Shown here: piece after piece, positions 11,019 through 62,744 of the stretch
Numbering within the stretch: the first letter of the stretch is position 1
Layout: each line of letters starts with the position of its first letter
Assembly (NCBI GenBank): GCA_003427395.1
Contig: BFEA01000018.1
Coordinates: forward strand, 3,239,461 to 3,303,460
Origin: Chara braunii
Lineage: Eukaryota; Plantae; Charophyceae
Direction of reading: 5' to 3'
DNA length: 64,000 nt
Made by a program: the position numbers and the translations under genes
Notes under the pieces: generated by a model
Seen by the model: only the letters and a program-made list of their open reading frames with translations
Database searches by the model: none
Told to the model about the DNA's origin: nothing

Positions 11019-11174
11019 AAGAATCAAAAACGCTTTACATACCAGCGCATACAACGAATGTTGAAAAAGAAGAAGGAAGAAGGGTCAGAAGGTGTAGCAC
11101 CACCCGAACTCGAAGTTGGTGAACCCGAAGCGGCGTGAGTAGCTACGATTTCTTTAGCTGAGAAATATCATTTC

Positions 11175-15400: not shown

Positions 15401-15529
15401 TTTATTTTTTTCACAAGCACGCACATACAACCCAGGTAAGCACTCTCACCAAATCTATCAAATTGGTTTCATAGTAGTTCACTGGTACCCCGTATGATTA
15501 ACCATTTCTTCCAATTTTACATATGGTAC

Positions 15530-16016
15530 GATGCTAGACCATTATGCTCAAAAATTTATATAAGATGTATTAATTATATACAAACAAAAAGCACAATAAC
15601 TCTTTTCTTCTTTGGGCATGCGACTAGACCATCCTTCTTAGAAACAATGCATAATCTTCCCAGAACTGGTTAATAGCTAACTTTTGAATATTTTTTAGTC
15701 TTTGACTTGGATATGGGCATGGGCTGAACCATTCTGCTTATAAATAATGTTCATCTTGCCCATATTACTTCCAATTGTACTCTTAAGTTTATTTTTTTTC
15801 TTAGTGATGTAACTTAAGACATACCATTCTGCTTAGAAACAATGTTTAACTATCTCTTCGCATACAATATGAGAAACATTGTTTAACTTTCCTCCAAAAT
15901 TTTGTCTCAGTCATTCTGCTTAGAAATCATGCTCGGCCATTTTTGGAAGAAGAAAGGAAAAAAAAAAAAAAAAAGGAAGTTGGGTTATTTTGCTTAAAAA
16001 AAATGTTCAACCATTT

Positions 16017-16053
<37 letters not shown>

Positions 16054-16162
16054 GATAAGGAAGTAGGTTCATTCTGCTTAGAAACAATATCCAACTTAAG
16101 TGATAAACCCAATAAGAAACCAGTTGACCCAAGTCATTCTGCTTAGAAACAATGTCTAGTCT
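15530..16162 (-). repeat. Hairpin array A: 8 interspaced copies of a 20-nt core (plus strand cattctgcttagaaacaatg) with variable complementary flanks
   Basis: Cores start at 15540, 15630, 15730, 15825, 15912, 15986, 16070 and 16135 (spacing 65-100 bp). Spacers are unrelated. Flanks pair, e.g. tgaac/gttca, gttgggt/gttcaac, aagtaggtt/atccaactt. Confidence 0.8.
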
Positions 16163-16337
16163 CACAATATCAGACAAACAAACCTAAAACATAAATATAG
16201 CAATCAGACCATTTAAGTCTAACTAAGTTGTGAAAATAAACAACAATCATAGAGTTGCATGCATACATATGAGAAAAACTAGAGAGATGCAATGATAAGG
16301 GTATAGTGGGCACACACAAAGATAAAAATTATACTTG

Positions 16338-16720
16338 TAATTTCTCTGCCTACAGCACCTTGCCTAGGTTTCGGTAGAACTCCCGCAATCTGTCGGGTAA
16401 CTTACCACAAAGGCGTTGACATAAATTACGGTTTACAATCCCCGCCTGTTGTCGTCCTCTCTGAACCAAATAAATTAGACTTGTAGCACGAAAGACAGAG
16501 AGAGAAATCGTTTAGCCTCTCGTGACATAAAAAAGGTTCACTCAGATTCGCGTAAGAAGGTCTTGAGGCCATTCACTCCTGAGGGTCCGCATATTAATAA
16601 CCAATCACAAATTGTAGCGCTCAAATGAGCGGGTCACAACAAGATTTAAAAAAAGGACGCAATGATGGAGGTACTAACAGACTGCGTTCGAACAGAACTC
16701 GAGATGACCTTTTTAAACAT
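16338..16720 (-). ncRNA. Conserved structured non-coding module, copy A (homologous to 20865-21190)
   Basis: Collinear shared motifs with copy B: aatt(t)ctct(g/a)cc..gg(t/c)aga, ct(c/t)cc(g/a)caatc, caatccc..tcctct..gaacc, ggttca(a)ctcag..cttgag..cctgag. Helices appear preserved despite sequence divergence. Confidence 0.55.
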
Positions 16721-16830
16721 AATACTCAAATAGTTAGCAATAACAGTCGAGTATGCAGCAACAATTTCGCGTCACTCAATTAGTAGTCAATTATTCTTGT
16801 CGCTATAGTGTGCTTAGTGAAGTTGGTCGT

Positions 16831-17405
16831 TGTGGAGCACATCGGTCCCGCAAGGGGACCCTCTCGACCGCGTCATACAGGGTTTCGCAGGACTTTGTTG
16901 CAGAGCGTTGTCGCTTCGGTCAACTGTTCTAGTCATACCTCTCACGAACCCCTACGACAGGATAGGGTGATGCAAGGTACAACTTACCTCCACCCGTGAG
17001 AGTTGTCGCAATCCTTTAGGTGGACGTATCCTCATCGAGCTATTGAACCTTGTATGAAAGTTTTTCGTACGAAATAGCAGATGTGGTTCAAACAAGGGCA
17101 TTTCTCGTTCGTTATAGCATAGGGGGTACGTGAGGTTAACGCCCACGTCGACCCCGTGCACGAATCGTCGGTCGAGGCGCTGATCTCTTGAACACGATCT
17201 TATGTCGGTTGACTAGGACGGTCAAGTCTAACCACCAAAGAATTGTGTTGGTGTCACGCGCGAGAGTCTAAATAGATATCGCGACAACATAAACTTTATC
17301 ATTTCGACCAACCATGCATAAATATGCAAGCGATCGCAATCGTGGCGTACTATGTGGTTCTCATGAACACGCGATTCTCAATGATTTTGAGGGTTACTTT
17401 CGACA
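16831..17405 (-). mobile_element. Short (~575 bp) LTR of element B, related to the termini of the 5.2-kb LTRs of element C
   Basis: Starts tgtggagcacatcgg (cf. tgtcgagcgtatcgg at 21680) and ends gagggttactttcgaca (cf. aagggtttctgctccgata at 26887). It shares the block acaactta..gttgtc..tagg..cgtatcc..agcta..tgaaagttttt with 21910-21990 and 29440-29520. Confidence 0.7.
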
Positions 17406-17875
17406 CTCAAATGTCAGATGACACGCGTCTTGAGGGGTTGATCCCTCGATGCTAGACAATTGCAAATGCGATTATGAGAGTTACCCTCTTCTGCAATCTG
17501 CGAAGAGGGGTAGACGAGTTTCGGCCCTTAGTGGCAGCCAAGCGCTCCTAACCTTGAAAGTCGGGTTCCATCTTCGGAGGCCTGGAAACAGGTCAAGAGG
17601 TTTGACTTTGACGGTCGCGACCGGACCTCAACGCCCAACTGTAAAAGTCTAAGAAGCAGAAATGAAAGGGCATCTGTCTTTTCTCTCGACACAAATTTGT
17701 TCAATCCTTACGTACTATCAAAGTAGACTGTGCGTCTACACAAAATATAAATATAACGAGGTTATAAAATACGAGGCGATCATTCTCACAATCACAGTTT
17801 GATTTTTTTCAAAATATACACATGATTACAGATGAAGTTAAATCTGAATTTTGATTCACAAAATATACTTGCAAT

Positions 17876-18639
17876 TAGGGTTGCCGGCGTGCCGAACGCC
17901 CGAACCCGAACGCCTGAACGTTCGCCACCCACTATCGACGCGTTCAGCCGAACGCGGATCCCTAAAAAAAAAAAAAATAATAAAAAATAATAAAAAAATT
18001 AAAAAAGTTGAAAAAAAAATATATCTTATGTAAAAGAATAAACTAAATAATATTTGCTTTAACGTTTTATTCAAATTTTTTACCAAATTTAAAATAAAAA
18101 TTAAATACTAAAAATAAATAATAATAATAAAAATTAAAAAAATAAAACGATAATTAAATTATTGAGTGAACGAGCATGTTTTTGACACCTCCATCTTTGG
18201 CGATTTTTCATTTTGTTTTGGCTGTGATAAATGCCATGAAAATTTATATTTGTGTATCTTACATAATAGAGAATCTAAGAATAAATTTTCAAAAAGTAAT
18301 AAATTGTTTTGTGCCCCGAAATAAAGAAAAAACAAAAAGTGTAAAGAAAAAAAAAACAAATTTGTGAGTGGGCAAGCAAGTTTTGACACCACCACCTTTG
18401 AGGATTTTTCAGTTTTTTCTGGCTGAACAGAACGATTTCAAAATTAATCGGGGGATACCTTACATCACAAAGAACGCACAATACAAAATTCAAAAAAATA
18501 TATATATATGTTTGGGTATCAAAATAATTGTTTGCGGGGTTCGAACCCTTTCAAGTTCGGGCCCCGTACGGGAACCCGAACGCCCGAACGTTCGGGGGTC
18601 AGCTTAGGGGGCCTTCGTACGTTCGGCCTAGTAACCATG
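17876..18639. mobile_element. hAT-superfamily MITE (764 bp) with perfect 8-bp TSD
   Basis: TSD cttgcaat at 17868-17875 and 18640-18647; imperfect TIRs tagggttgc / gtaaccatg; subterminal ccgaac repeats at both ends; AT-rich non-coding interior. Confidence 0.9.
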
Positions 18640-19089
18640 CTTGCAATCTCACCAAAGATTTAACATCGACATACCACACACTACACGAGGTCAACTTCAA
18701 CCACTCTATGCGCTCACACCCGTTGCCTTATTTACACAAGCCCCAACCTTTGTCCAACTCTCCAAAAGAACACACTCAGTCTCTTTTTAAATAAACACTT
18801 GATAAAAATCCGGATAACAAAAAAACAAAAAATCCAATTTAACGCATAATGGCTAAGGTCTTAGGTTGAGTAGCGAGAATGAGTTAGAGTTGAATAGCGG
18901 AAACTGACTTGTTATCAAAAGAAAACGGAAAATGATCATCGTAGGACCGACTTGAAGCTAGTAAAGCCATAAAATAATCTGAATGAAAATGACATGCAAC
19001 ACAACACAGGTCAGTGCCCAAGCTATGTGTCAGTGAGTATGAAATACTCCTACCTTCCTACCTTACCTGTCATATCTGTCTGAAAATGC

Positions 19090-19510
19090 ATGAAATTTCG
19101 GAAGTATCTCTTCTAAGCAAGAGTAAACTGTTAGATTTTCGAAGTTATAAAATAGTATAACTCCTTCAGAAGTAAGGAAGTTTCGGCAACGCTTCCGAAA
19201 GGAAACATGTCCTTACATCATTTATATGAGATTGAATATGAAATTTAAAGGCGATCTTTGATTTTACAGTATCAAATTTTGTCTAACTCCCTGAATCACG
19301 AAAACATTGGGCAGCATCTCCTTTAGAGTATAAATCGGATATAAAGTCAAGATAAATTTAAAATTTTGTAAACACAAAATTTAACTAACTCCTTGGTTTT
19401 GCAAAATTTTTGGCATCACTTCCCTTAGCGGAATTGTTTTTTCAAAATTTATAGAAAGCCAAGTATGAGAAATAAACTTTTAAAATGCAAAAAATGAACT
19501 AACTCCTATA
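19090..19510. repeat. Degenerate ~100-125-bp periodic repeat (taactcc ... ttyggca..ytcc)
   Basis: taactcc at 19158, 19284, 19386 and 19500; a second motif near 19096, 19181, 19307 and 19409. Confidence 0.6.
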
Positions 19511-19675
19511 GTTTCAGCACGTGGCGAGCATTTAAAACAACTACCTATCAAAGATAAGATTCATAACAGGTCGAACTCACACTCAACCACATGCCAGTTC
19601 ATACCACAATGAGTAAGTACTCTGATCGAAACCTTTAGTTCTTCTTCTCATAAATAATTAGTTGTCTCTCGGTTA

Positions 19676-19803
19676 GATAAACCCCAGTACCCTTTCTTAC
19701 ATATGGTATAAGAAAGGTAACCCTTGGCTTCGTATACATAACCTCAATATCCTTCCTTACATATGGCGTAAGAAATTTAACCATCGTCTTTGTATACATA
19801 AAC
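19676..19803. repeat. 60-bp tandem duplication, each unit with a hairpin around catatgg
   Basis: cctttctta-catatggta-taagaaagg, with a second copy at 19751-19780. Confidence 0.8.
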
Positions 19804-19839
19804 GGACGACGTAACTATTTATCTCTTCATTAGGTAGTT

Positions 19840-20626
19840 AACTAGACTAAATCGAAGTCACATTGTCTAGTTTTGTCAAGTGTTTAATATCCAATTTATG
19901 TTACACTCAAGCGTTTTATGAACCTTTTATCTTTTAAAGACTAGGGTTGAGCTAAACCGAAGCCATATTGCTCAGTCCGCCTAATGTTACATTATTATAT
20001 TCTTAATTAAATATTTTCTTTCTTTTGTGATAAGCTGTAGTCAGACAAAGTTGAAGCCACATTATCTGAGTAGGTTGGTTCAATAATTGAAGTATAATAT
20101 ATTTATATAGGAAGTCATATTTTCATATTCATATTTTATGTGCTCGACCTTAAAATAAGCCAAAAGGAAGTCACATTGCTTAGTCATCAGTCCAAACCTC
20201 CTTCATAAAAAATAAGTAGTTGAATCTGATAAAAGTCACCTTACCTTACTTTTAAACTCTTTCAACACGCAAATCACCACAAGAACAACAACTAGACCTG
20301 ACCAAAGCCATATTGTTCGGTAAGAGTAAGGAATATAACGACATAGCATAGTCAACTAGGTTAAATCGAAGTTGCATTGCCCAGCTGCACGAATAACAAC
20401 TTATTGAGGTATGGCAATCAAACATGACCGTAGCCACATTGTTTGATTTTCAAAAATACGAACAATACAACAACCAAGTCTGAGCAAAGCCACATTGTTT
20501 GGTTGTAAATACGACACATCAAGAAATATTACAATAACTAAACCTGATCGAAGCTACATTTTCTAGTTGCAGAGGAAACAAAGTAAACAAAGAGGTCAAG
20601 CGAAACTGAAGTCACATTATCTGACC
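19840..20626 (-). repeat. Hairpin array B: 12 interspaced stem-loops with a conserved 17-nt core (plus strand ~ytrayCGAAGyCACATT) and covarying stems
   Basis: Cores start at 19848, 19953, 20047, 20105, 20161, 20226, 20298, 20362, 20424, 20480, 20544 and 20602. Stems include aactagac/gtctagtt, tgagc/gctca, taagc/gctta, aatcaaac/gtttgatt, caaccaagt/gtttggttg and ggtcaagc/atctgacc. Spacers are unique. Confidence 0.9.
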
Positions 20627-20864
20627 CTTTGGGGACCCAATTAATTCAAACGAAATTACCTTTCTCCCACCTTTTCCTCAATTCATCTCCTTCAACCTGA
20701 ATTTCAAGCAATAGAATAATATGAATTTCAGAAACCGTTCTTTTTAAATTAAGTTCATAATAAAGTAAAATTCATAGGGATGCACACATACAAAGCAATC
20801 AGCGTACAGAGATGTACTGATAAGGGATTAGTGGATTCACACAAGTCATAAGTGGTATACCTGA

Positions 20865-21190
20865 CAATTCTCTACCTCCATAACTCATCCCGAGTCGTGG
20901 CAGAGCTTCCACAATCGCAGGGTGGACCTTCCATAAGATCTTGTTGCGGTTTTGTTGGTTGCAATCCCACGTGTCGCCTTCCTCTTCGAACCTAAGATTA
21001 AGGAAAGTTGGACTCTCAAGATACAGGAGGGGTTCAACTCAGTCTCACGAGAAATGACCTTGAGATCCCAATGCACCTGAGAGTTCCACAATGGTGGCAA
21101 AAAGTATAATACGCAGAGTAAACTGCACTCTGACAACCTTCAAGTCGCAGTTGTAATCCCTCTTTCAGAGTGTGATCACTCCCTTCAAAT
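20865..21190 (-). ncRNA. Conserved structured non-coding module, copy B
   Basis: Homologous to 16338-16720 (see motifs there); helices ctctacc/ggcagag, gaacc/ggttc and ctcag/ctgag. Confidence 0.55.
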
Positions 21191-21679
21191 CACAATATTT
21201 CCTCCTCTGGCCAAATTGAGTTCACGCAGCCGGAAAAAAACACGTTGAAATAAAGCACACTCTCTGTACTATATTTGAATCGTAGACAGACGAACAGGGA
21301 AAAAAAAATGTATCGTTAGTTGGTTCCACAACACAGCTGTAGTAACTACGATGCACGACGGTCCGCAGCAAACATACAGCAACGACAGCAAAAAGCTCTG
21401 GAATAACACAATCAAGAAAACCCAACAATAATGTCAGGTGACAACACAACAATTGTGTTGGCAGAAAGACTCAGTTTTGTGAGAAAAAACAGAGATAGCA
21501 CAACCGAAAAAAAAAAAAAAAAAAAAAAANNNNNNNNNNNNNNNNNNNNNNNNNNNNNNNNNNNNNNNNNNNNNNNNNNNNNNNNNNNNNNNNNNNNNNN
21601 NNNAAAAAAAAAAAAAAAAAAAAAAAAAAGTGGTAACACTGTAGAAGGACATAGCGATATAGGAACCCAACAATCTTTG

Positions 21680-24600
21680 TGTCGAGCGTATCGGCCATCG
21701 CCTTTTTCTCGCGAAGAGGTAGGAACCCTCCCAGCCATATTACGCAGGAGTAAAACAAAATAAAATTAAGGAGACAACTTGGGGACGACGCATAATTAGC
21801 ACCCCGAACCGTCGAGACGGGTGTGGTCGCGTCGTCCCTTTGTCGTTCTAGCCGGGGGCGCCAACTGTACTTCCCACAGTCCCCTACAACCGGATAGGTT
21901 CCCACGGGGCACAACTTACTTCCCTAATAGGTTGTCACCACCCTTAGGGGCGTATCCCTACCAAGCTACTGACCCACGTGTGAAAGTTTTTAAATGCAAT
22001 TGCAGAGGTAGGTCAGTCGAGGGCGTTTGCTCGCTCGCTGTAGTATAGGTACGCGCGGTTAAAACGCCTATTCAACCCTGATGTCGCTCGTAAGTACGAA
22101 GTGTACGCTGGTCGACAAGGACGGTCTCAACCAAGCGTAAACCCCCTTTGTCCCTTTAAACATTAGTCAAAAGAAAGCTATAACACCACAGATAGTTACG
22201 TCAAAATGAGTTACCGTAATCAACATGAATATATATCCAATCTGAAATGATAACTGAAAGAATCAAAATCATCATTAAATACATCCAATAACACAAGATC
22301 AAAATAAAATCCGACCATTTTGGGTCGAACTCCATAAAAACCATACAGCCGCCAACAAGGAGTTAACTTTCGACAATAACATAGATGCAACCGACAAAGT
22401 AGTCGAACAACCTCCGTTTTGACTTGATGAGATGTGTTACCAAACTTATTCATTCTAACCCACCGCCAACTTAAGATTAGGCATGCACACATTTGTCTCC
22501 ATACATTTCTAATATTTTTGGATGACAGATTGCTTTGCAGATGATTCTTTATCAGGTGCATTGCTTGAAGTGTTGCATGACTCTCCATTTAGAAAGTGGT
22601 TTGGGGTACTTCTTCTCCTCGCCCGACCACAAGATTGAGATCTCAGAAGTCGGGTCGTCTCCACCGAATCGGCAAAGTACCCCTCCATAGAACGGTCCAC
22701 TCTGGGTCGATACCAGGGTCGGCTTCTAAAGCAGCGAACCCCGCCCCATATACATTCCTTGAAAGAGAGGTGTTCACCGGAATTATTTTTGAGTTGTTAT
22801 CACCCTCCCCTGGTTAAGGTCATTTAGACGAAAAGAGTCAGAGATGATAAAGATGAGAATCATTTGGACAGGTGTAGGTAGATAAGGTCATTCGAGATAG
22901 AAAGGGTCAATCCCTGGGAAAAGCTAAGACTGTTTGACCTTATCTACCATATTTCAATCGAATTCATTCTACGGTACACACAAAATTAACATTTTTCAAA
23001 ACAACAAATCATTTTTGGCGTGCATGCAAGTAAAATACAAAAGGAAGATAATTTTTTCGTCTTTCCTCAAATAGGCATAATCAATCTCCTTTGCAAACAT
23101 CCTTCTAACTACCTGCACACACTTTAACAACCACAGGTGCAGAAAATTCAGCAACCCATACTCCCGTCAGATCTCACTTTCCACATGTATGATCACACAT
23201 GTGTTACTTAACCTTTTCTTCAGAATGTTCAAAAGAAACAGGGTCAAGCAAAGTGTGGGTTCACACAGGTGTGAAAAGGAATCCAAGTAAATCAACTGAC
23301 CGACCTTGAATGAAGTGGTGTCGAACACGCTCTTTCTCATTCAAGAAAGCCAAGTAGAAGTATACTTGTCATCGGAAAAAACCGCAGCCCCGAGGTAAGT
23401 CCCGGGCCGACAAATGGCCTCAATTCACTCTCCACTCACACGTCCCGTACGTGGTGGCCCCAAGTGTGAAAACGGTGAGCTGCACATGCTTCAAAAAAAC
23501 TTCACGGGTCCCACGCCAGTCCGAACTGGTCCCAGGTGATCCCAAATGGTCCCTCACTTTTCCTTCCACCACCTTTATGGCGACAACCTCCAAAACCACT
23601 TCTACCAAGCCTCAAACAAAAAACAATAAAGTTTGAGAGTGTCGATTCCGCCTGTCCTACTCACATGCCCCACTGGTCCAAAAAAATCTCATTAGGCCAA
23701 TGTCAATGGCCCTGCCACCGTCGACACGCATGACGTGTTGTTCCACCTTGACAAGCTTGGTCCCACTAATGAACTATCGCCGATACGTCTAGTGTCGCCT
23801 ATCGTACCGTCGCAATAGTCACATTGCAATTTCCTCCCCTTCACCGGCGTTGACGGCGAGCCCTTCGACGTACCAAAAATATCCAACACTCTCTCTCCAC
23901 TTAGTGTTGCTCGACAAACCCAAATTTCGGCAGCATAATGCTGCAAAAATGGTTGTCGTTGACGCTAAAACATTTCGGCAATATTTTCCCTGAAAAGTGG
24001 AAAAACAGTCTGCCGAGGTCCGTCCGCCGGTACCACCGCCAATGAAGTCTTGATGTCCCGCTGTTGTCGCTAAAAAACACCGTCAAACTAATAAAATTTT
24101 GGGCCTTGGACAAAATCGAGGTCCAAAACAGCCTCCTGTCGTGCCGCTTTGGTCCCGTAGAGTCTTGAGTGCCGCTCCATTGGACCAGCACCAGCTAGGG
24201 GAAGTGGAGCAGAGTGCTCCCTACCTCGGTTATGGCTGCCTTGCTCCTCTCGTGCTCCACTGCAGACCTCCGACCTCCTCCCACGTTGCCTCTGGCAGCT
24301 CCTCCAGCAATCTAGTAGCACTCAAGTGTGTTTGTCACACACTGGCAGCACGAGTGTGTTCTATGTGGCAGTTGGGGACAACTGCCTGTTTTATAATGGC
24401 TGAGGAGGTTTGGACGTCACTCCAACCACCAGGCAAAATCGCGGGCTCTCGGTAAAGGCTAATTGTGGTCGCACGACAACCACAGCCTTAGTGAGGGCAG
24501 TTTCTTTAACTGCCCTATTTTTATTTTTCTTTTCTTTTCCTCAGCTATCTCGGAATTTTACGAGATAGTTGAGATCATGGCATTTCTAAAACTGCTTTTC

Positions 24601-26887
24601 TTTTATTTTTATGATAAGGGGGTTGGAGAGATACAACCCCTTTCATTTTGATGTATTTGGATCCGTTTCCCAAAGCAGATACATCGGGGAAAAAGTTGTA
24701 TTTGGCTTTTTCCTCTATGACCCTTCCATTTTCAGGCTCCCTCTAAAAACGAGACCAGTTCCCTTTGGCAGTTTCAGTAACATCTCGTGAGGACAAGTGT
24801 CCTCACAAGAATGCTGCAAAAATAATAAACCCTAAAGAAAAATAAAACTACATCTAACTGCACACGCCTGACCCGTGTCTTGGCCAAATGCATGCTTGTT
24901 GGAACTAACAGCCTTTTCCCCTTTTCCCTCTGCCCTCCGCCCGAAAACAGGGAGTGTAGTTGTCATGCTGGGAACAACCTCCAATTTTCCCTTTTTCTCC
25001 CTCTCCAACTCCCTCAGCTTCTCCAACTCACGGCCACAGGTATTTGTTTCAGAACGAAGTGGGAGTCATTGTGCTCTCATACAATCTCAAAGACTGTTTT
25101 TTCCTATGAGGCAATGACCTCGTTTTGCTTTTGTTTTTTATTTATTTATTTACTTATTTATTTTTTTACTCGTTTCAACCTCCCCCCTCGTTTTTTTCCT
25201 TGCTGCCTGTGCCCCAACGGCCACGAAATGAGGGGGGGAACAAACAGGACCAAAAAAAAAAAAACGAAAAGCAGCAACCACTTTANNNNNNNNNNNNNNN
25301 NNNNNNNNNNNNNNNNNNNNNNNNNNNNNNNNNNNNNNNNNNNNNNNNNNNNNNNNNNNNNNNNNNNNNNNNNNNNNNNNNNNNNNNNNNNNNNNNNNNN
25401 NNNNNNNNNNNNNNNNNNNNNNNNNNNNNNNNNNNNNNNNNNNNNNNNNNNNNNNNNNNNNNNNNNNNNNNNNNNNNNNNNNNNNNNNNNNNNNNNNNNN
25501 NNNNNNNNNNNNNNNNNNNNNNNNNNNNNNNNNNNNNNNNNNNNNNNNNNNNNNNNNNNNNNNNNNNNNNNNNNNNNNNNNNNNNNNNNNNNNNNNNNNN
25601 NNNNNNNNNNNNNNNNNNNNNNNNNNNNNNNNNNNNNNNNNNNNNNNNNNNNNNNNNNNNNNNNNNNNNNNNNNNNNNNNNNNNNNNNNNNNNNNNNNNN
25701 NNNNNNNNNNNNNNNNNNNNNNNNNNNNNNNNNNNNNNNNNNNNNNNNNNNNNNNNNNNNNNNNNNNNNNNNNNNNNNNNNNNNNNNNNNNNNNNNNNNN
25801 NNNNNNNNNNNNNNNNNNNNNNNNNNNNNNNNNNNNNNNNNNNNNNNNNNNNNNNNNNNNNNNNNNNNNNNNNNNNNNNNNNNNNNNNNNNNNNNNNNNN
25901 NNNNNNNNNNNNNNNNNNNNNNNNNNNNNNNNNNNNNNNNNNNNNNNNNNNNNNNNNNNNNNNNNNNNNNNNNNNNNNNNNTTTTTTTTTTAAGTTGATG
26001 ATGCCGCTGGCATAAGCCAACGGCTACAAGAGTCAGCGTCTCACTTTGTTGATGCCTCCCGTCCCTACCTGAGTGCAAAACCGAGTTTGATTCCCACAGA
26101 GGAATCGAAAAACAAAATTTGGACTACTTCTCTGTTTATGCGTGTCATTCTTGCGCAGGGGCCATGCTATTCGCACGACTTTTTTTTCAACCGCGAGATC
26201 TGAAGATTTCGCGGTCGAAATTGACCGCGCCTCCATTCTACCCCAATGTGCAACTCCAAAAGGAGCCCAAGTAGGGTTTCGCCGGGGTCGATCCGGTATC
26301 CGTCAGGTGAGAATCTGGCATGTTATCCTACTGGGCTAACTCCTATTTCACACTAGATAATATTGAAGGGCTATGCCCAGCAGGAACAACCAGCACATAG
26401 TCAGTAGGCCTCCGCCTGCCCTCGCCTATTCTCTGACCCCTTGAGACAAACGTGCACCTATCCTCGTAGGGTAGAAGGCATGTCGCCCTGACATACCGCT
26501 ATCCGTTCCAAATCCCGGCGAGGCAACCCTTTAAAATATCAAGTCTGAATCTATACTTTCGTGTTGTGAGATAATGCGGTCATCTTTTTTTGCCTCGTTA
26601 AACCTTGAATCGTGTGGCTATCATTATTTTAGGTAGAACAGGTTTCTATTTTAGCATTTCCACTCCCGCTCCCCTTTGCGGCCCTGCTAGAAATTGTCGA
26701 CTACCGTCATACACAATCGTCCGGACTGAGGTTCAAAAAAATTATAGTCTCTCGGTCATTGGTTAATCTGAATGAACTTCTGGCAGACGTCAATCTCATC
26801 AAGTCCTTCAATTCAACGAAAAAGTCGGACAACGTCCGATATTGAAAAACCTAAGCAAATACCCTTGTAAGGGTTTCTGCTCCGATA
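21680..26887 (-). repeat. 3' LTR of element C (contains N gap 25286-25981)
   Basis: tgtcgagcg ... ctccgata; aligns along its sequenced length with 29395-34613. Confidence 0.85.
26114..26169 (-). pseudogene. U6: U6 snRNA 3'-half fragment embedded in the LTR
   Basis: The reverse complement reads TAGCATGGCCCCTGCGCAAGAATGACACGCATAAACAGAGAAGTAGTCCAAATTTT, matching the plant U6 3' half (AGC triad, ISL, 3' U tail). The 5' half and ACAGAGA box are missing. Confidence 0.9.
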
Positions 26888-26902
26888 GTATTCCCAGACC
26901 CC
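26888..26902 (-). promoter_or_regulatory. Putative polypurine tract of element C
   Basis: Minus strand ggggtctgggaatac directly abuts the 3' LTR; it is only moderately purine-rich. Confidence 0.4.
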
Positions 26903-27054
26903 ATTGAATTACTTCCACGTTTTTCATCATTTACTTTAAAGGTCAGGATTCGTATGGGAAAATTCATGTAAAAGGAACGATTACAGTACACAATAATTCC
27001 AACAATTGTTCAGAACTAAGTTGGGACTTTTCCACCAACATACAACAATACAAC

Positions 27055-27270
27055 AACAAAACTGGATTTAGCCTCTAGAAACCTTAACTTAATACAACAA
27101 AATTGAATTTAGCCTCTAGAAGCCTTAACTCAATACAACAAAACCGAATTTAGTTGTCAGAAGCCTTAACTCAATACAACTCATAAGTGGATGAAATGAT
27201 ACAAAATTTTGCCTCTGGCAAGCCTTATCCAAACTTGGACGCATGTCTAGCCCCTGAAAACCTTCAGTTT
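27055..27270 (-). repeat. Hairpin array C: three 41-bp tandem units plus two diverged units, 17-nt core tagcctctagaagcctt
   Basis: Cores at 27069, 27110 and 27151, diverged at ~27209 and ~27248. Flanks ttgaatt/aactcaa and ccgaatt/aactcaa pair fully on the minus strand using G-U. Confidence 0.75.
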
Positions 27271-28603
27271 AGAGGAACTTTTTTTAAATCATCCCAGCAT
27301 CATCCCACTGGCGGCCACTCAAAAGTTTTTCTCTCTGAATGGTACCGGAAGCTCTTCGACGAGTTCCAAAATGAAATTCATTTGGTTGATACCTTTGTTG
27401 TACCTTAGTATAACTCAAGTGAGTCAGGAATAACCCCTGACAGACCGCTCAAGCGTATCAACCTCCTGGAGTTGTTCAGACATAGTCTGAAAGACCCTTT
27501 TAGAGAGAAACTGTTTGTTCAAAGTTCTTCGTTCAAGCTTGAAACTCACCTCACTCCACATAAGTTATAATGCCCGTTATTTACGAACACCTTGTGATAG
27601 GCGTCGAGGAGTGGTGTAATCCACTTAACGGGATAGCATCTCTACATCAAGCCCCGATTTAGATTCGAGTCTGACCACATTCCTTTCGATTCCAGTGTTG
27701 TGATCTTGTCAATCCCCTGTACATAGAGTAGGACAACCCCACCTCATACAACCGAGGTTGACCAGACTTCGATTACAGAGATAAGGTGACTCTGTTTGAA
27801 ACGAGGTTAGGTGATCACTTCTCCCATCATAGCAAACAATAGTCGCCTACTTCTACATGCAGCGTTTCAGCAAGGCCTCAACACCTCCCTCCTTTTCAAT
27901 GATAGTGTAGTCTTTCTCCCTTAAATCACACAGGATTCGGAAGACAACATCCAACTACGGACCAGGAGCATAGATCCGGCACGAGCCTCACTACCATCGA
28001 GACAACTCACAAATCCATCAGAAATTTATCATAACATGATAACAGGCGTATGATCGTTTCATTCACGACACAAAAAGTTAAACATTATATTCAAAATCAA
28101 CTGTAAACAGTACAATTCACAACAATTCACAATGAACGCTTTCACATAGAATTTCATAAGGATTTTTGGTTCATCATCCCCCAATCACAACGAGGGTTCA
28201 TCCATATCACACGAAAAATGAACTTAGGAAAAAACGCTTTATAAAATATTGCATAAAATCAATAATCGATTGATAATAATCCAAAATTCAACGAGTAATA
28301 ACAATCGGCTGAACCTTGAAAAATATGAGCGTAGATCATGAGATCTGCAAGACTTAAAAATAATGCCTCAAAAATAAAATAACAGAGCCAAGACCATTAT
28401 AACTCCTCAATTTTTCCCACATGCGATCAATAAGCACATCTCTGATAAATTTGTCTTCCTTCTTAGCTGGGAAGATGGACACATTATTCCAATTTACACA
28501 GACTTCGTCCTCTCCTCTATTCACAATCCCGTTTTCAATATCAAGGCGTCTGCAAAATTTTATCTTATGACTTTAAATACCACAGTACACACATCTTCAG
28601 GGC

Positions 28604-29080
28604 TTATAATGAATGTATTTTCTTCATGTAATCCCTCTGATTCGAACATTCACCTTGTTCCTGTATGTTGATGCAGTGACTATTTTTATCATCATGTAGT
28701 GATGCAGTGACCATAGCTTGAGTCCCTTCACCTCGTTGAGTCAAGTTCCAAGCGACCCTCTCAACCTTAGTAAGCTCACGAGGTCGTTCTAACTGATCGG
28801 ACTCAGTCTGCTCTTTACTCTTTAATTCCACTATCTTCCTTTTCCCCTTACGATCCCTATTTTTAGATGATTCTGAGAACTTCGTAGCCATTAGTTTTTC
28901 AAACTCGCTCCAAGTCTTAGAGACTCTTAAAAGAAGCCGAATATCGGATTTCAACCTTTCATCAATGAAATTCAAAACAAAAAAGAATTTGTGTTGCTCC
29001 TCCCAAAACATTAACATTGCTAAGTTCCAGAATGCTTGCAGAAACTCAACAACCTCGCTACCTCCGAAGAGAGGAGCCAT
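28604..29080 (-). pseudogene. gag: gag N-terminal remnant of element C
   Basis: APLFGGSEVVEFLQAF..W..K..TWSEFEKLMATKF resembles Retrotrans_gag; it lies ~300 bp downstream of the PBS. Confidence 0.65.
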
Positions 29081-29374
29081 ATGAGTAAAAACTCCTTTTC
29101 GCCATCGTGTCGCCCTGCAGAAGGCATAAAATTATATTAATAATCGAACAACTGAAGTAATAAAATAATATTTTTTTGAGATAGAACTTAAACCTTCATC
29201 AATATTTTTAAAAATCACAATATCTGTAAATCTAATGCAATAATTAAAAAAATTATAAGAAATTTTAAACTTAATTTATGTATTATATAAACAAATATTT
29301 ATAATTCAATATTAATCATCAAAATTGAATTATCTCAGTGTCGTTCGAACAGGGACAACGGTAGTTTGTCGTTA

Positions 29375-29392
29375 TCCCCGGCAATGACACCA
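29375..29392 (-). promoter_or_regulatory. Primer-binding site complementary to tRNA-Asp
   Basis: Minus strand TGGTGTCATTGCCGGGGA versus the Athila-type TGGCGCCGTTGCCGGGGA (3 transitions); it starts 2 nt after the LTR end. Confidence 0.85.
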
Positions 29393-32121
29393 CCTGTCAA
29401 GCGCATCGGCCCCCGACTTTTTCTCACGAAGAGGGGGGGCACAACTTGCTTCCCCAAGGGGTTGTCACCACCCTTAGGGGCGTATTCCTACTGAGCTACT
29501 GACCTATGTGTGAAAGTTTTTAAATGCAACTGCAGAGGTAGGTCAGCCCATGGCGTTTGGTCGCTGACTTAATATAGGTACGAGCGGTTAAAACGCCTAT
29601 TGAACCCGAACGTCGCTCGTCCGTTAGAGCGCTGATCTCCGAAGTACGACGCGTACGTTGATCGATAAGGACGGTCTCAACAAAGTGTGAAACCCCCTTG
29701 TCTCTTTAAACACTAATAAAAAGAAAGCTATAACAACCACACATAGTTATATTAAAATGAGTCATCGTAATCAACATGAATATATATCCAATCTGAAATG
29801 ATAATCGAAGGAATCAAAATCATGATTAGATACATCCAATAACACAATATCAAAATAAACTCCGACCACCCTGGGTCGAACTCTACAAAAATCATACAAC
29901 CGTCAACAAGGAGTTGACTTTCAACAATACCATACAGCCGCCAACAAGGAGTTGACTTTCAACAATAACATAGATGCAACCGACAAAGTAGTCGGACAAC
30001 CTCCGTTTTGACTTGATGAGATACGCTGCCAAAGTTATTTATTTCAACCCACCGCCGACTTAAGATTAGACATGCACACACTTGTCTCCATACATTTTTA
30101 ATTTATTTGGATGACAGGCTGCTTTGCGGATGATTCCTGATTAGGTGCATTGCTTGCAATGTTGCATGTCTCTCCGTCTAGGAAGTGGTATTGGGTACTC
30201 CTCCTCGTACGAGCACAAGACTCGGATCTCAGAAGTCGGGTCGTCTCCACCGAATCGGTAAAGTATCTCTCCGTAGAACGGTCCACTCTGTCTCGATAAC
30301 AAGGTCGACTCTTAAAGCAACGAACCCCGCCCCATATGCTTCCTTGAAAAAGAGAACGAGTTCACCGCAAGTTTTTTTTAGTTGTTCTCGTTTTTTCCTG
30401 GTTAAGGTAATTTAGACGAAAAGAGTCAGAGATGATAGAGAATATCAATAATTTTGACAGGTATAGGTAGATAAGGTCATTCGGGATAGAAAGGGTCAAT
30501 CCTTGGGAAAAGCTAAGTCGATTTGACCTTATCTGCCATATTTCAATCGAATTCATTCTACGGTACACACATAATTAACGTTTTTCAAAATAACAAATCG
30601 TTTTTGGCATGCAGGTATGTGAAAAACAAAAGGAAGACAATAATTTTATTTTTTCTCAAATAGGCATAATCAATCTCCTTTGCAAGCATCCTTCTAACTA
30701 CCAATACACACAAAAACAACCACAGTCCAGAAAATCCAACAACTAATAATCTAGTCAGATCTCACTTTCCACATGCATGACCACACACGCTTTGTTCAAC
30801 CTTTTCTTCTGAACGTTCAAAACAAACAGGGTCAAGCAAAGGTTCACACAAGTGTGAAAAGGAATCTGAGTCAATCAATTGACCGACCTTGAATAAAGTG
30901 GTGCTGAATGCGCGCTGGCTCACTTAAGAAAGCTAAGTAGAAATATATTCGTCGCTGAAGAAAACCGTAGTCCCGAGGTAAGTCCTGACCGACAAATGGC
31001 CTCAATTCACCCTCCACTCGCACGTCTCGTACGTGGTGGCCCAAGTGTGAAGGTGAGCCGCACACGCTCCAAAAAAATTCATAAGTCTCACGTTAGTCCC
31101 TACTGGTCCCAGGTGGTTCTAAATGGTCCCGCACTATTCCTTCCAGCACCTGATGACGACAACCGTCAAAACCACTTCTACCAAGCCTCAAATAAAAAAC
31201 AATAAAGCCCGAGAGTGTTGATTCTCTCGACACCGTCCGTCCTACTCACATGCCCCGCTGGTCCCATAAGATCTCACTAAGCCAATGTCAATGGCCTTGC
31301 TACCGCTGACTCGCACATACAAAAAAAAACGACGTGTCGTTCCACCTTGACAAGCCTGGTCCAACCAACAAGCTATCATTGATACCTCTAGTGTCACCTG
31401 CTGCACCGCCTCAATAATCACGGTGTAATTTTTTCCCCTTCACCAGCGTTGACGGCGAGCCTTTTGATGTACCAAACATATCCAGCACTCTCCCTCCACT
31501 TAGTGCTGCCCGACGAACCCCTATTTCGGCGGCATAACACTGCAAAAATGATTGTCGTTGATGCCAAAAAAATTTGGCAACATTTTCCCTCAAAAGTAGG
31601 AAAACAGTCTGTCGAGGTCTGCCCGTTGGTACTACTTCCAATGAAGTTTTGATATCCCGCCATTGCCGCTAAAAACCACCATCAAATTAATGAAATTTTA
31701 GTCCCTGGACAAAATCAAGTTCCAAAACAGCTTCCTGTCGTGCCGCCTTGGTCCCGCAGAGTCCTGAGTGCCGCTCCACTGGACCAGCACCAGCTAGGGG
31801 AAGTGGAGCAGAGTGCTCCCTACCTCGGCTATGGGTCCCTTGCTCCTCTCGCGCTCCACTGCAGACCTCCGGCGTCCTCCCACATTGCCTCTGGCAGCTC
31901 CTCCAACAACCTAGCAGCACTAAAGTGTGTTTGTCACACACTGGCAACACGAATGTTTTCTATGTGGCATTTAGGGACAGTTGTCTGTTTTATAATGGCT
32001 GAGGAGGGTTGGACGTTACTCCAACCACGAGGCAAAACGCGGGTTCTTAGTGAGCCCTTGATTTGCCCAAGATCAAAGGCTAACTGTAGCCGCACAACAG
32101 CCTTTGACTTAGTGGGGGCAG

Positions 32122-32249
32122 GTTTTTTTTTTTTTTTTTTTAATGCTTCAATCTATTCGTGGGGAGCAGCACGTGTTGGGAACCGCGCCCAACGTCCCTT
32201 ATAATTGGAATACATCGATGATTGATGAAAAGTTCAAATGATTAAGGAA
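32122..32249 (-). mobile_element. Short poly(A)-tailed retroposed insertion with 12-bp TSD in the 5' LTR
   Basis: TSD tagtgggggcag at 32110-32121 and 32250-32261; a T19 run at the left end; the site is empty in the other LTR (~24489). Confidence 0.85.
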
Positions 32250-33822
32250 TAGTGGGGGCAGTTTCTTTAACTGCCCTATTTTTTTTTCTTTTGTTTTCCT
32301 CAGCTATCTCGGAATTTCACGAGATAGTTGAGGTCTTGGCATTTCCAAAACTGCTTTTCTTTTATTTTTTTGATAACCCCTTTCAGTTTGATGTATCTAG
32401 ACCTGTTTCCCAGGGCAGATACATCGGGGAAAAGGTTGTACTTAGCCTTTTCCTCTATGACCCTTTCATTTCCAGGCTCCCTCTAAAAACGGGAGCCTGA
32501 CAGTTATCTCTGATAGTTTCTACTAGTGGTAGCGTCTCGCGAGGACAAGTGTTCTCAGAAGAATGCTAGAAAAAGAATAAAAACCTAAAAGAAAAATAAA
32601 ACTACATCTAACTGCACGCGCCTGACCCTTACCTTGGTCAGGTGCATGCTTGTTAGAACTAACAGCCTTTTCCCCTTTTCCCTTTGCCCTCCCATGAAAA
32701 CGGGGACGATAGTTGTAAGGTTGGGAGAGGTAGGTCCTCCCTATCCTAGCCTCCCAATTTCCCTCCTCCTCCCTTTCCAACTCCCGCAGTTAAACTCACG
32801 TGCACACTATGAGCCGCGAGATGTTGGATCTCGCGGCCATAGGTATTCGTTTCAAAACGAAGTGGGAGCCATTGTGCTCCCATACAGTCTCAAAGACTGT
32901 TATTTCCTATGAGGCAACAACCTCGTTTTGCTTTTGTTTTTTATTTATTTATTTACTTATTTATTTTTTTACTCGTTTCAACCTCCCCCCTCGTTTTTTT
33001 CCTTGCTGCCTGTACCCCAACGACCATGAAATGAGGGGGGGAACAAACAGGAAAAAAAAAAAAAAAACGAAAAGCAGCAACCACTTTACCTGTACGTCCT
33101 CTCCCTCGACTGTGGAAACACAGACCTGAGTTTGAAACCAAGCCGACTGGGTGGGGCTAGTGTTTATTTTCATGTTCTGACTAACGGTTCATTCTGATTT
33201 TACTCAACCTATCGTTGGGGGTAGCGTGGGGCTATCTTGCAGGTAAGTTGACAACTCCTCTTTCTCTCTCTCTCTATCACACACACACACACACTCACAC
33301 ACACATACAAGTAGTTAGTGCATTCATCCGCATTATAGGGGTAGATTCAGTCGATTTTGCTCATTCTATCGATGAAAGTATTATGAGGTCATTCGCAAAG
33401 TTAGGAGCTTCGCCCGTTCGTTCTCAATGAGTGGCCGTTTTTCAGTAGCTCGTTAAAACGAGAACGAAAAAAGAAAATTCTAAAAAAGAAGAAAATTTAA
33501 AGAAAATCATCTACCTGAAATAAAAATTTTAAGCCAATGAATCTAAAAAGAAAATTTAAAAACAGGGGGAAAATCATCTTTCCTGAAATAAAAATGGTTG
33601 TCCATTTTCAACGGGCGCCTGCTGGACTATTTGGGGACTCTGGGTCCCTTGCCACTCCTCTGGGCGCCATGTGGCGCTGTTCGTTTTTTTTTTTTTTTTT
33701 TAGGTGATGATGCCATTGGCATAAGCCAACGGCCACAAGAGTCAGCATTTCACTTTGTTGATGCTTTCTCTCCCTACCTAAGTGCAGACTCGAGTTCGAT
33801 TCCCACAGAGGAATCGAAAATC

Positions 33823-33878
33823 AAAATTTGGATTACTTCTCGGTTTATACGTATCATCCTTGCGCAGGGGCCATGCTA
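33823..33878 (-). pseudogene. U6: U6 snRNA 3'-half fragment embedded in the LTR (second copy)
   Basis: aaaatttggattacttctcggtttatacgtatcatccttgcgcaggggccatgcta is the reverse complement of the U6 3' half. Confidence 0.9.
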
Positions 33879-34669
33879 TATTCGTGCGGCTTTTTTTCGG
33901 CCACGAGATCTAAGGATTTTACGGTCGAAATTGACGGCGCCTCCATTCCACCCCAATGCGCAGCTCCTTTAGAGCTAGCCGAAGTAGGGCTTCGTCGGGT
34001 TCGATCCTGGTATCCGCCAGGTGAGAATCTGGGATGTTATTCTACTGGGCTAGCTCCTATTTCACACTAGATAGGAGCAGCCGTTCAATATGAAGGGCTA
34101 TGCCTAGCGGGAACATCCAACGCACAGACAGCAGACCTCTGCCTGCCCTTGCCTATTTTTCGACCCCTTGAGGCAACCCGCGCCTATTCCCGTAGGGCAG
34201 GACACATGCCCCCCTGACATACCGATGTCAATTCAAAATCCCGGCAGGGCAACCTTTTAAAATATTAGGTGTGAATCTAGACTTTTGTGTCGTGAGATAA
34301 TGCGGTCATCCTTTATTGCCCCGTTAAACCCTGAATTGCGCGACTGTCATTATTTTAGGTAGAACAGGTCTAATCTCAGCATTTCAACGTCCATTCCCCT
34401 CTACGGCCCTGCTAGAAATTGTCGACTACCGTCATTACACAAGCATCCCAACTTAGGTTCATAAAATTTATAGTCTCTCGGTCATAGGCTAGTCTGAATA
34501 AACTTCTGGCAGATGTCAGTCTCATCAAGTCCTTCAATTCAACTAAAAAGTCGGATAGCGTCCGATATTCAAAAAACTGAGCAGATACCCTTGTAAGGGT
34601 TTCTGCTCCCACACCGGTTATCAACAGTATAAAAAAAAAAAAAAAACATTTTCACATGTTCAGGTTATC

Positions 34670-62523: not shown

Positions 62524-62600
62524 TGTCTTATATATATATTTTACAACCGGGGTTAAGGTGGATTATCACTCACAGTGTAATCAGTTAGGGGATTCTGCTG

Positions 62601-62652: not shown

Positions 62653-62744
62653 TTGTCACAGCCCTTCGTTTGTTGTCCTCTTCTCCCTCTCTGCCTACAG
62701 TTTACCGGGCAGCTCTGTTTGACCAACTTTGATGATATATATGT

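What the first reader, a model, noticed from the sequence alone, without database searches (positions are those of the whole stretch)
15530..27270. Three related LTR elements each carry a different hairpin array in the same position: a lineage-wide cassette with family-specific cores
Seen: arrays A (15530-16162), B (19840-20626) and C (27055-27270) have different core sequences but the same design on the minus strand, namely an outer variable stem, a purine-rich internal loop or bulge, a short inner helix and a tetraloop (A: guu-UCUA-agc; B: uggc-UUCG-guca; C: ggcuu-CUAG-aggcu). A and B both lie 3' of a homologous structured module and both end near the motif ttacatatggta (15517 and 19697). 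B and C have homologous LTR termini. Array C is still a near-perfect 41-bp tandem, while A and B have fully diverged spacers. Inference: arrays arise by tandem duplication of one hairpin, and then only the hairpin is maintained. The family-specific core could act as a self-recognition code between an element's RNA and its cognate protein, retained even in non-autonomous copies. Membership of A in the family rests on the shared module, since no LTR for A is visible.
Basis: inference. Interest (0 to 1): 0.88.

Follow-up and report, generated by a model that had tools for sequence, protein, structure and literature searches.

The report
Hairpin arrays in algal retroelements
Three neighbouring, related retrotransposon remnants of what earlier scan notes call a stonewort alga each carry a row of small hairpins built on one shared stem scaffold but with a loop sequence specific to each row, which suggests a testable role for the unexplained repeat arrays of plant retrotransposons.

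Summary
On the minus strand all 23 units (12 in B, 8 in A, 3 in C) fit one plan: an 8-nt arm, a 17-nt loop (B, C) or 19-nt loop (A), and an 8-nt arm. The stem is paired in 75% of cells, against 62% in shuffles and 18-47% in slid controls.

- **Arms:** they keep one purine/pyrimidine pattern, change mostly by transitions, and are no more alike within an array than between A and B.
- **Loops:** they are array-specific (identity 0.80 within A, 0.66 within B, 0.36 between A and B).
- **B spacers:** they have no residual similarity.
- **Inner helix and tetraloop:** not supported.
- **Array C:** it is a young 41-bp tandem of the same hairpin.

A, B and C sit in a head-to-tail chain of LTR and internal regions that share homologous LTR-end and PBS sequences. 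No 3' LTR is visible for A or B.

RNA-seq shows no reads on A or B. Wobble counts do not identify the strand. No other family copies could be fetched.

Best reading: a selected multi-site docking platform on the element's RNA. This is a hairpin variant of the known family-specific arrays in the 3' internal region of plant Ty3/gypsy elements.

This scan has already reported similar arrays elsewhere in the same genome.

The parts
15532..16161 (-). Array A: 8 hairpin units (8-nt arm, 19-nt loop AUUGUUUCUAAGCAGAAUG, 8-nt arm) at 16127-16161, 16062-16096, 15978-16012, 15904-15938, 15817-15851, 15722-15756, 15622-15656 and 15532-15566. The period is 65-100 nt. Poly-G and poly-A runs lie in two spacers.
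15517..15528 (-). 12-mer boundary motif (minus strand TACCAUAUGUAA), followed by a purine-rich, PPT-like stretch. It marks the end of detectable A/B homology.
16221..16470 (-). Non-coding module A, 65% identical to module B.
16810..17154 (-). LTR end of element A. It comprises the U5-like block 16936-17154 (69% identical to B), a splice-donor-like AGGUAAGUUGU at 16979-16989, and two degenerate LTR-end/PBS-like sites near 16905-16927 and 16810-16849.
19697..19708 (-). The same 12-mer boundary motif at the end of element B's internal region. It lies inside a 60-bp x2 repeat (19680-19801) that forms an 8-bp hairpin around a purine-rich AAGAAAGGG.
19840..20626 (-). Array B: 12 hairpin units (8-nt arm, 17-nt loop AAUGUGRCUUCGRUYWR, 8-nt arm). 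The period is 56-65 nt for the first nine steps, then 94 and 105 nt. The spacers are unique and U/G-rich.
20747..20995 (-). Non-coding module B.
21650..21863 (-). Two LTR-end/PBS-like sites of element B: TGGCGCC-type at 21850-21863 and a decayed homologue of the C PBS at about 21650-21678. The roughly 185-nt block between them is absent from C.
21866..26885 (-). A 5-kb LTR shared by C (as its 3' LTR) and B (as its 5' LTR). It contains assembly gap 25286-25981 and a U6 3'-half-like segment at 26113-26173.
27061..27264 (-). Array C: three tandem 41-bp units, each one hairpin (8-nt arm, 17-nt loop AAGGCUUCUAGAGGCUA, 8-nt arm), at 27143-27175, 27102-27134 and 27061-27093. Two loop-only relics without stems lie at 27210-27226 and 27248-27264.
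29375..29392 (-). PBS of element C, TGGTGTCATTGCCGGGGA. It has 3 mismatches to the complement of a plant tRNA-Asp 3' end (tRNA sequence recalled from memory). It lies 2 nt after the LTR end ...TGACA.
29395..34611 (-). 5' LTR of element C (TG...CA), with a U6 3'-half-like segment at 33822-33879.

Best explanation
**What it is.** A, B and C are three versions of one inherited retroelement part. Each is a row of small stem-loops in the non-coding internal region of related LTR retroelements with giant LTRs; a tRNA-Asp-type primer site is clear in C and degenerate in A and B. The copies of A and B here are non-autonomous and decayed. Earlier scan notes name the organism as Chara; I did not check that.

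**The unit.** Each unit is an 8-bp stem closing a 17-19-nt loop.
- Shown: the stem is kept paired while its letters drift, mainly by transitions within a fixed purine/pyrimidine pattern.
- Shown: the loop is held constant within a row and differs between rows.
- Shown: in B the linkers are free to diverge completely.

**How rows turn over (inferred).** Rows grow by tandem duplication of one hairpin, with C as the young stage. They age by linker decay, with A and B as old stages. A new loop type probably replaces an old one by birth and death of units.

**How it works (inferred).** The row is a multivalent docking platform on the element's genomic RNA for a sequence-specific RNA-binding protein. 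My favoured partner is the Gag/nucleocapsid of the matching autonomous element, which would select the RNA for packaging and would explain retention in ORF-less riders. A host export or stability factor, as for retroviral CTE/RTE elements, is the second choice.
For: - All 23 units share the 8 / 17-19 / 8 geometry (alignment A5).
- The stem is 75% paired against 62+-2.2% in shuffles (0/500) and 18-47% when slid. There are 43 double-change cells against 19.9 (0/500). B alone gives 78%, with all 8 pairs compensated.
- A arms match the purine/pyrimidine scaffold of B at 58/64 and 56/64 positions, against 50% background. Transitions to transversions in arms are 61:12 (B) and 39:14 (A), against 30:19 and 9:8 in loops.
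- C units match the scaffold at 15/16 positions, within 1 nt of the register that pairs.
- Arm identity is 0.40 within A, 0.47 within B and 0.43 between A and B. Loop identity is 0.80, 0.66 and 0.36. The 5' half of the loop is partly shared across arrays (0.48-0.62) and the 3' half is not (0.23-0.31).
- B spacers have no residual similarity (z = 0.2) despite a regular period.
- The rate order loop < stem < spacer is the signature of a constrained hairpin.
- The loops have no above-chance complementarity to the rest of their elements, which favours a trans-acting partner.
- The arrays make up about a third or more of the ORF-free internal regions of A and B.
- No Rfam family matches.
Against: - There are no RNA-seq reads on A or B in three oligo-dT runs, each only 6-13% sampled.
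- Most single hairpins are thermodynamically weak. Only 2 of 12 B units have z below -3.
- G:U against A:C counts of 23:20 give no strand polarity, so RNA and single-stranded cDNA cannot be separated.
- The stem of A alone is only marginally supported.
- Two C relics keep the loop but not the stem.
- All units come from one decayed locus and are paralogues, so shuffle tests can overstate support.
- No protein partner, no autonomous relative and no second copy of any of these arrays was seen.
Confidence: 0.45

Rival explanations
1. The arrays are a neutral by-product. They would be ordinary 'hypervariable' tandem repeats of the 3' internal region, made by reverse-transcriptase strand-transfer or template-switch errors. 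The hairpins would be mutational features: RT pause sites that provoke duplication, or stems created and repaired by template switching. They would have no function of their own.
For: - Family-specific tandem arrays at this place are common in Tat/Ogre/Retand elements. They are thought to arise from aberrant strand transfers, and their function is unknown (PMC7004042; PMC11963269; PMC6317226).
- C is a plain 41-bp tandem.
- Template switching can create and maintain perfect stems without stepwise compensation (PMC8794818).
- There is no expression and no strand polarity.
Against: - A neutral repeat should decay evenly. Here the loops are 66-80% conserved, the stems keep pairing with saturated transitions, and the B spacers are unalignable.
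- The same scaffold recurs in three arrays with different loops.
Confidence: 0.2
2. The arrays act at the level of DNA or single-stranded cDNA rather than RNA. Examples would be hairpins in minus-strand cDNA that guide strand transfer or recombination, or repeated protein-binding or enhancer sites.
For: - G:U and A:C mismatches are equally frequent at 23:20, so the complementary strand folds as well as the RNA-sense strand.
- No transcripts were seen.
- Earlier scan notes place similar arrays inside LTRs, where enhancer repeats are common (unchecked).
Against: - Covarying arms around a conserved centre point to intra-strand pairing, not a duplex binding site.
- In C the array is in the internal region, not in U3.
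- The equal mismatch counts are also what random post-insertion transitions would give in a copy whose two 5-kb LTR copies differ by about 17%.
Confidence: 0.1
3. The three arrays are unrelated repeats that look alike by chance, and the elements are not one lineage.
For: - No nucleotide homology exists between the C internal region and those of A or B.
- A covariance model of B does not find A or C units.
- The C scaffold match alone is weak after multiple testing, with about 0.3 chance hits expected.
Against: - LTR-end, PBS and leader homology links all three.
- A arms match the scaffold of B at 114/128 positions.
- All share identical 8-bp stem geometry and a partly shared 5' half of the loop.
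- A and B share the 12-mer and the module.
Confidence: 0.04

Closest known systems
Hypervariable tandem-repeat region between pol and the 3' LTR in plant Ty3/gypsy non-chromoviruses (Tat/Ogre, Retand), per Macas 2009, Vondrak 2020 (PMC7004042) and the Retand survey (PMC11963269)
   Same: Arrays lie in the non-coding internal region near the PPT and 3' LTR. Repeat sequence and length are family-specific. The elements have giant LTRs and some are non-autonomous. The arrays arise by tandem duplication, and C is exactly such a tandem.
   Different: The units here are hairpins with covarying stems and a conserved loop. In A and B the spacers are unalignable, and Tandem Repeats Finder does not report either array. 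One stem scaffold is shared across arrays with different loops. None of the three papers read here mentions hairpins or secondary structure, and they state that the function is unknown. Lineage membership by RT could not be tested because there is no pol.
Retroviral and retrotransposon RNA transport elements (MPMV CTE, IAP RTE, musD transport element, avian DR elements; reviews PMC3856414 and PMC4588558; new CTE in PMC11379458)
   Same: They are cis-acting structured RNA just upstream of the PPT and 3' LTR, sometimes as direct repeats. They are needed by unspliced genomic RNA, and I recall that non-autonomous ETn elements keep the musD-type element.
   Different: There is no sequence or Rfam similarity. 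Those elements are one or two long stems with internal loops, not 8-12 short hairpins. No functional or NXF1-binding data exist here.
Multi-hairpin packaging signals (retroviral Psi; dispersed coat-protein-binding stem-loops of RNA viruses); from general knowledge
   Same: They consist of several stem-loops showing one loop motif on variable stems. This gives multivalent, cooperative recognition by the capsid protein, with virus-specific motifs.
   Different: Psi lies in the 5' leader. The position here is at the 3' end of the internal region in C and ambiguous in A and B. The loops are unusually long at 17-19 nt. No Gag partner is known.
CRISPR arrays (a look-alike only)
   Same: Both have regularly interspaced short palindromic units with unique spacers of about 23-39 nt.
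   Different: The context is eukaryotic retroelement DNA. The repeat stems differ from unit to unit, whereas CRISPR repeats are near-identical. No cas-like ORFs of 90 aa or more flank the arrays.

Membership tests
LTR retrotransposon (Ty3/gypsy-type, tRNA-Asp primed) | Two homologous LTRs ending TG...CA | tested here: inconclusive
   C has LTRs at 29395-34611 and 21866-26885, about 80-83% identical, starting TG (TC in the second copy) and ending CA. A and B have only an upstream LTR end. No homologous 3' LTR was found.
LTR retrotransposon (Ty3/gypsy-type, tRNA-Asp primed) | Primer binding site complementary to a tRNA 3' end, next to the 5' LTR | tested here: met
   C has 18 nt with 3 mismatches to the tRNA-Asp complement, 2 nt after the LTR end, with 0.02 expected by chance. 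The tRNA sequence was recalled from memory. The B and A sites are degenerate homologues.
LTR retrotransposon (Ty3/gypsy-type, tRNA-Asp primed) | gag-pol coding capacity and RT-based lineage | tested here: not met
   No ORF of 90 aa or more lies between 12467 and 21412. The 158-aa ORF of C has no Pfam family and no homologues. These copies are non-autonomous, so the lineage cannot be assigned.
LTR retrotransposon (Ty3/gypsy-type, tRNA-Asp primed) | Target-site duplication | not testable with these tools
   The elements form a chain that shares LTRs, so no element has both of its own flanks.
Hypervariable 3' tandem-repeat region of Tat/Ogre/Retand elements | Array lies between the coding region and the PPT / 3' LTR | tested here: inconclusive
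   For C this is met: the array lies 176-390 nt upstream of the 3' LTR and downstream of the only ORF. For A and B the array is the last recognisable part before a shared 12-mer and purine-rich stretch, but no 3' LTR or ORF exists.
Hypervariable 3' tandem-repeat region of Tat/Ogre/Retand elements | Head-to-tail tandem monomers of 3 or more copies, detectable by TRF | tested here: inconclusive
   C qualifies, with a 41-bp unit at 3.1 copies. A and B are not detected by TRF. Only the 33-35-nt hairpin recurs, and the B spacers are unrelated.
CTE/RTE-type RNA transport element | Sequence and structure match to a described element, or export-factor binding | tested here: not met
   No Rfam match reaches significance on either strand. 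Binding cannot be tested here.
miRNA / small-RNA precursor hairpins | Stem of about 20 bp or more, and a match to a precursor family | tested here: not met
   The stems are 8 bp. The best hit is mir-33 at 21.8 bits against a gathering score of 50.

The most novel reading that the evidence does not exclude
The loop sequence is an address code. Each retroelement family's Gag/nucleocapsid, or another element-encoded RNA-binding protein, would recognise only its own loop type displayed many times on a generic stem scaffold. Non-autonomous riders such as A and B would be mobilised only by the partner whose code they carry. New loop types would spread through a row by birth and death of units as protein and RNA co-evolve. 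This would be a natural multi-copy docking system, comparable to engineered MS2 hairpin arrays, and would give a function to the 3' repeat arrays of plant LTR retrotransposons.
Probability: 0.22. Interest if true: 0.85.

Novelty: new variant of a known kind. Interest (0 to 1): 0.62.

Why it matters
Family-specific repeat arrays in the 3' internal region of plant Ty3/gypsy elements have been known since the 1990s. [quoted passage not shown]

Here the repeats resolve into hairpins with three properties:
- The fold is conserved by compensating changes.
- The loop is fixed within an array but differs between related elements.
- The stem scaffold is shared across arrays.

That is the signature of a selected, multivalent recognition element. 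It turns an old descriptive puzzle into testable questions. Which protein binds the loops? Does loop type decide which autonomous element mobilises which rider? Does it control packaging or export?

Such arrays would also be a natural source of orthogonal RNA-tag and protein pairs.

The scan's earlier notes suggest the phenomenon is widespread in this genome with several loop types, so a genome-wide census is feasible.

Tried and rejected
**Fold details**
- The wobble test for strand gave 23 G:U against 20 A:C, which is uninformative.
- No colinear, unit-by-unit orthology between A and B shows in the arm identity matrix.
- The loops have no above-chance complementarity to their own LTR, leader or internal RNA.

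**Expression**
- Three oligo-dT RNA-seq runs and one contig set show zero depth on the B array bins (19850-20649) and at most about 0.4 in the A array bins. Only conserved LTR blocks and a MITE-like insert are covered. This is no proof of silence.

**Known families**
- Rfam gives nothing credible on the arrays at relaxed thresholds.
- A CRISPR-like reading is rejected because the stems vary from unit to unit, no cas-like ORFs are present and the context is a eukaryotic retroelement.
- The module is not a coding remnant. Translated similarity is equal in several frames and on both strands.

**Fetching other copies**
- The 158-aa ORF of C and a 122-aa LTR ORF have no homologues in the protein collection.
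- A metagenome scan for the 20-nt core of A returned one isolated match that is not an array.
- The gag-protease on the plus strand (9577-12467) belongs to a different element: it has a DTG protease and no Asp-type PBS. I did not use it.

**Element structure**
- Module plus array as part of an LTR is rejected. The module occurs only twice, the two copies are 65% identical with different loops, and neither is homologous to the 5-kb LTRs.
- Homology between A and B does not extend downstream of the 12-mer. The alignment score of 89 lies within the shuffled range, whose maximum is 92.
Full report
**Setting.** The window is eukaryotic. It has 47% GC, a single-exon DCP1 gene, U6-like segments and retroelement remnants. 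Earlier notes of this scan name the organism as the stonewort alga Chara braunii. I could not verify this because run and organism names are coded. No ORF of 90 aa or more lies between 12467 and 21412, so arrays A and B are in non-coding DNA.

**Map, all on the minus strand.**
- A self-comparison shows a 5-kb direct repeat, 21906-26883 against 29436-34609, at about 80-83% identity.
- The upstream copy ends ...TGACA. Two nucleotides later comes TGGTGTCATTGCCGGGGA (29392-29375), which has 3 mismatches to the complement of a plant tRNA-Asp 3' end. By chance 0.02 matches are expected. The tRNA sequence is from memory.
- Both copies begin TGGGAGCAG or TCGGAGCAG.
- Element C is therefore: LTR 34611-29395, PBS, a 2.5-kb internal region, then LTR 26885-21866.
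- The internal region of C has one 158-aa ORF with no Pfam family and no homologues. Array C lies 176-390 nt before the 3' LTR.
- The second LTR is again followed by PBS-like sequence and then a poly(A) run containing gap 21530-21603.
- Next come a 250-nt non-coding module (20995-20747), array B (20626-19840), a 60-bp x2 repeat and the 12-mer at 19708-19697.
- About 2.5 kb further on lies a 219-nt block (17154-16936) that is 69% identical to the end of the B LTR.
- After it come degenerate PBS-like sites, a leader snippet shared with C, module A (16470-16221, 65% identical to module B), array A (16162-15532) and the same 12-mer (15528-15517).
- The three units thus form a head-to-tail chain of LTR, internal, LTR, internal, LTR end, internal.
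- Neither A nor B has a homologous 3' LTR. The body of the presumed A LTR (19685-17155, which contains a MITE-like insert at about 17880-18640) matches nothing else in the window.

**Gaps.**
- Neither gap touches an array.
- Gap 21530-21603 sits between poly(A) runs. The ungapped element A has the same order, LTR end then module (466 nt apart, against 873 nt in B), which supports the join.
- Gap 25286-25981 is inside the B LTR. Its flanks are colinear with the ungapped C LTR, where 602 bp lie between the matching points.
- I laid no reads across either gap. Reading frame is irrelevant because the region is non-coding.

**The hairpins.**
- Anchoring the B units on their core shows a fixed register of 8-nt arm, 17-nt loop, 8-nt arm.
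- On the 12 B units the stem is paired in 78% of cells, against 19-46% when the partner is slid. All 8 pairs carry changes on both sides, and no shuffle reaches the observed pairing or covariation score.
- A covariance model of B finds exactly these 12 units in the 64-kb window and nothing else significant.
- Re-registering A the same way gives 8 + 19 + 8. Its stem is 64% paired against 20-50% slid, with marginal shuffle support (25/500 and 12/500).
- C's 41-bp monomer is the same object: AUUGAGUU, a 17-nt loop, then AAUUCAAU. The stem is 8/8, 8/8 and 6/8 paired in the three units.
- In a joint alignment of all 23 units, the arms fall in the same columns. The stem is 75% paired against 62+-2.2% in shuffles (0/500), with 43 double-change cells against 19.9+-4.9 (0/500).

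**One scaffold, different loops.**
- The arms follow the purine/pyrimidine pattern RRYYRRRY ... RYYYRRYY.
- A arms match the pattern derived from B at 58/64 and 56/64 positions, against a 50% background.
- Arm changes are mostly transitions (61:12 in B, 39:14 in A), unlike loops (30:19 and 9:8).
- C matches the pattern at 15/16 positions, one nucleotide off its pairing register. The per-position background is 4e-4, and about 0.3 chance hits are expected in the region searched, so this is only suggestive.
- Arm identity is 0.40 within A, 0.47 within B and 0.43 between them, so the arms carry no array signature.
- Loop identity is 0.80, 0.66 and 0.36 respectively.
- The 5' half of the loop, A[A/U][U/G]G[U/C]NNCU[U/A], is partly shared by all three arrays (0.48-0.62). 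The 3' half is array-specific (0.23-0.31 between arrays).
- B spacers show no residual similarity (z = 0.2) although the period is regular at 56-65 nt.
- The rate order is therefore loop slower than stem, and stem slower than spacer, with pairing retained. This is what a constrained hairpin looks like, and not what an evenly decaying tandem repeat looks like.
- No unit-by-unit orthology between A and B is visible. Birth and death of units fits better than parallel change of every loop, and C shows the birth stage.

**What did not hold.**
- Individual hairpins are weak. Most z-scores lie between -2 and +0.6, and two B units reach about -3.5 to -3.9.
- G:U and A:C departures are equal at 23:20. 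The strand therefore follows only from element orientation, and an RNA hairpin cannot be separated from a cDNA hairpin. Equal counts are also what post-insertion transitions would produce.
- Three oligo-dT RNA-seq runs show no reads on the B array bins and only stray partial matches in the A bins. Reads at 90-95% likeness pile up only on conserved LTR blocks and the MITE-like insert.
- Two relics in C keep the loop without a stem.

**Comparison with what is known.**
- Plant non-chromovirus Ty3/gypsy elements (Tat/Ogre, Retand) commonly carry family-specific tandem arrays between pol and the 3' LTR.
- These arrays are thought to arise by aberrant strand transfers and to seed satellites, and their function is unknown (PMC7004042; PMC6317226; PMC11963269).
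- 'Family-specific arrays in the same position' is therefore a known kind of feature, and C alone would be an ordinary member.
- The new content is the hairpin: covarying stems, a conserved loop, a shared scaffold, unique spacers. None of the three papers I searched mentions hairpins or secondary structure.
- The functional analogues are retroviral and retrotransposon transport elements upstream of the 3' LTR (PMC3856414, PMC4588558, PMC11379458) and multi-hairpin packaging signals. There is no sequence or Rfam similarity to any of them.
- Template switching as a non-selective source of stems (PMC8794818) remains a rival for how the stems originate. It does not explain the rate differences.

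**Mechanism.**
- Shown: conserved geometry, compensated stems, array-specific loops, relatedness of the host elements, and a tandem origin for C.
- Inferred: the row is a multivalent docking platform on the genomic RNA.
- The loops have no complementary site elsewhere in the elements, which favours a protein partner.
- Retention in ORF-less A and B, where the array makes up about a third or more of the internal region, favours a cis-requirement for mobilisation in trans. I rank packaging by the cognate Gag first and export or stability second.

**Limits.**
- I could not obtain any other copy of these families. The key predictions therefore remain untested: presence in intact members, and loop type tracking phylogeny.
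- This scan has already reported similar arrays with other loop types elsewhere in this genome. I treat those notes as leads, not as support.

Noticed in passing
window 15517-34611 (minus strand): The three elements form a head-to-tail chain that shares LTRs: LTR, int C, LTR, int B, LTR end, int A. The internal regions of C and B are unrelated although their flanking LTRs are about 83% identical. This could be a recombinant or concatemeric structure, or a mis-assembly of a short-read scaffold.
   Followed up: partly
window 26113-26173 and 33822-33879 (minus strand): Both 5-kb LTR copies contain a segment that reaches Rfam's gathering score for U6 snRNA (46-47 bits). The segments are only about 60 nt long, so each is a partial U6.
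   Followed up: partly
window 16979-16989, 21911-21921, 29441-29451 (minus strand): A splice-donor-like motif (AGGUAAGUUGU, AAGUAAGUUGU, AAGCAAGUUGU) sits at the homologous place in the U5-like end of all three LTRs. It lies in the block that related RNA-seq reads cover best. The hairpin rows of A and B lie downstream of it.
   Followed up: partly
window 21679-21905 vs 29395-29436 and 16810-16935: A and B carry two successive LTR-end/PBS-like sites separated by about 185 nt. C has only one, so the true LTR boundary of B is ambiguous (21866 or 21679).
   Followed up: partly
window ~17880-18640: An insert with GC-rich CCGAACG-type ends around an AT-rich core is extremely abundant in the read sets, with contig depth up to about 12,000. 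It is probably a MITE-like repeat inserted in the presumed A LTR.
   Followed up: no
window 19680-19801: A 60-bp x2 duplication lies just after array B. Each copy carries the 12-mer (the second with 2 mismatches) inside an 8-bp hairpin that includes a purine-rich PPT-like AAGAAAGG.
   Followed up: no
window 19840-20626, loops of units B2, B5, B12: The centre of three B loops reads UUCGAU[U/C], the same as the T-loop consensus of tRNAs, and of tRNA-Asp as I recall it. This is a post-hoc resemblance seen in only 3 of 12 units. ARAGORN finds no tRNA in the window.
   Followed up: no
window 62599-62654 (+) and 62300-62571 (-): There is a sub-threshold type III hammerhead match (33.8 bits against a gathering score of 48.5; local E = 2e-5). 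Next to it a fragment reaches the gathering score of the eukaryotic LSU rRNA model (52.7 bits against 50).
   Followed up: partly
window 9577-12467 (+): A gag (zinc knuckle) and DTG aspartic protease from a different retroelement lie on the plus strand. The element is truncated before RT and has no Asp-type PBS.
   Followed up: partly
window 48073-49347 (+): An intronless 424-aa ORF carries a Dcp1-like decapping domain (Pfam E = 1e-45). It is a host gene among the repeats.
   Followed up: no
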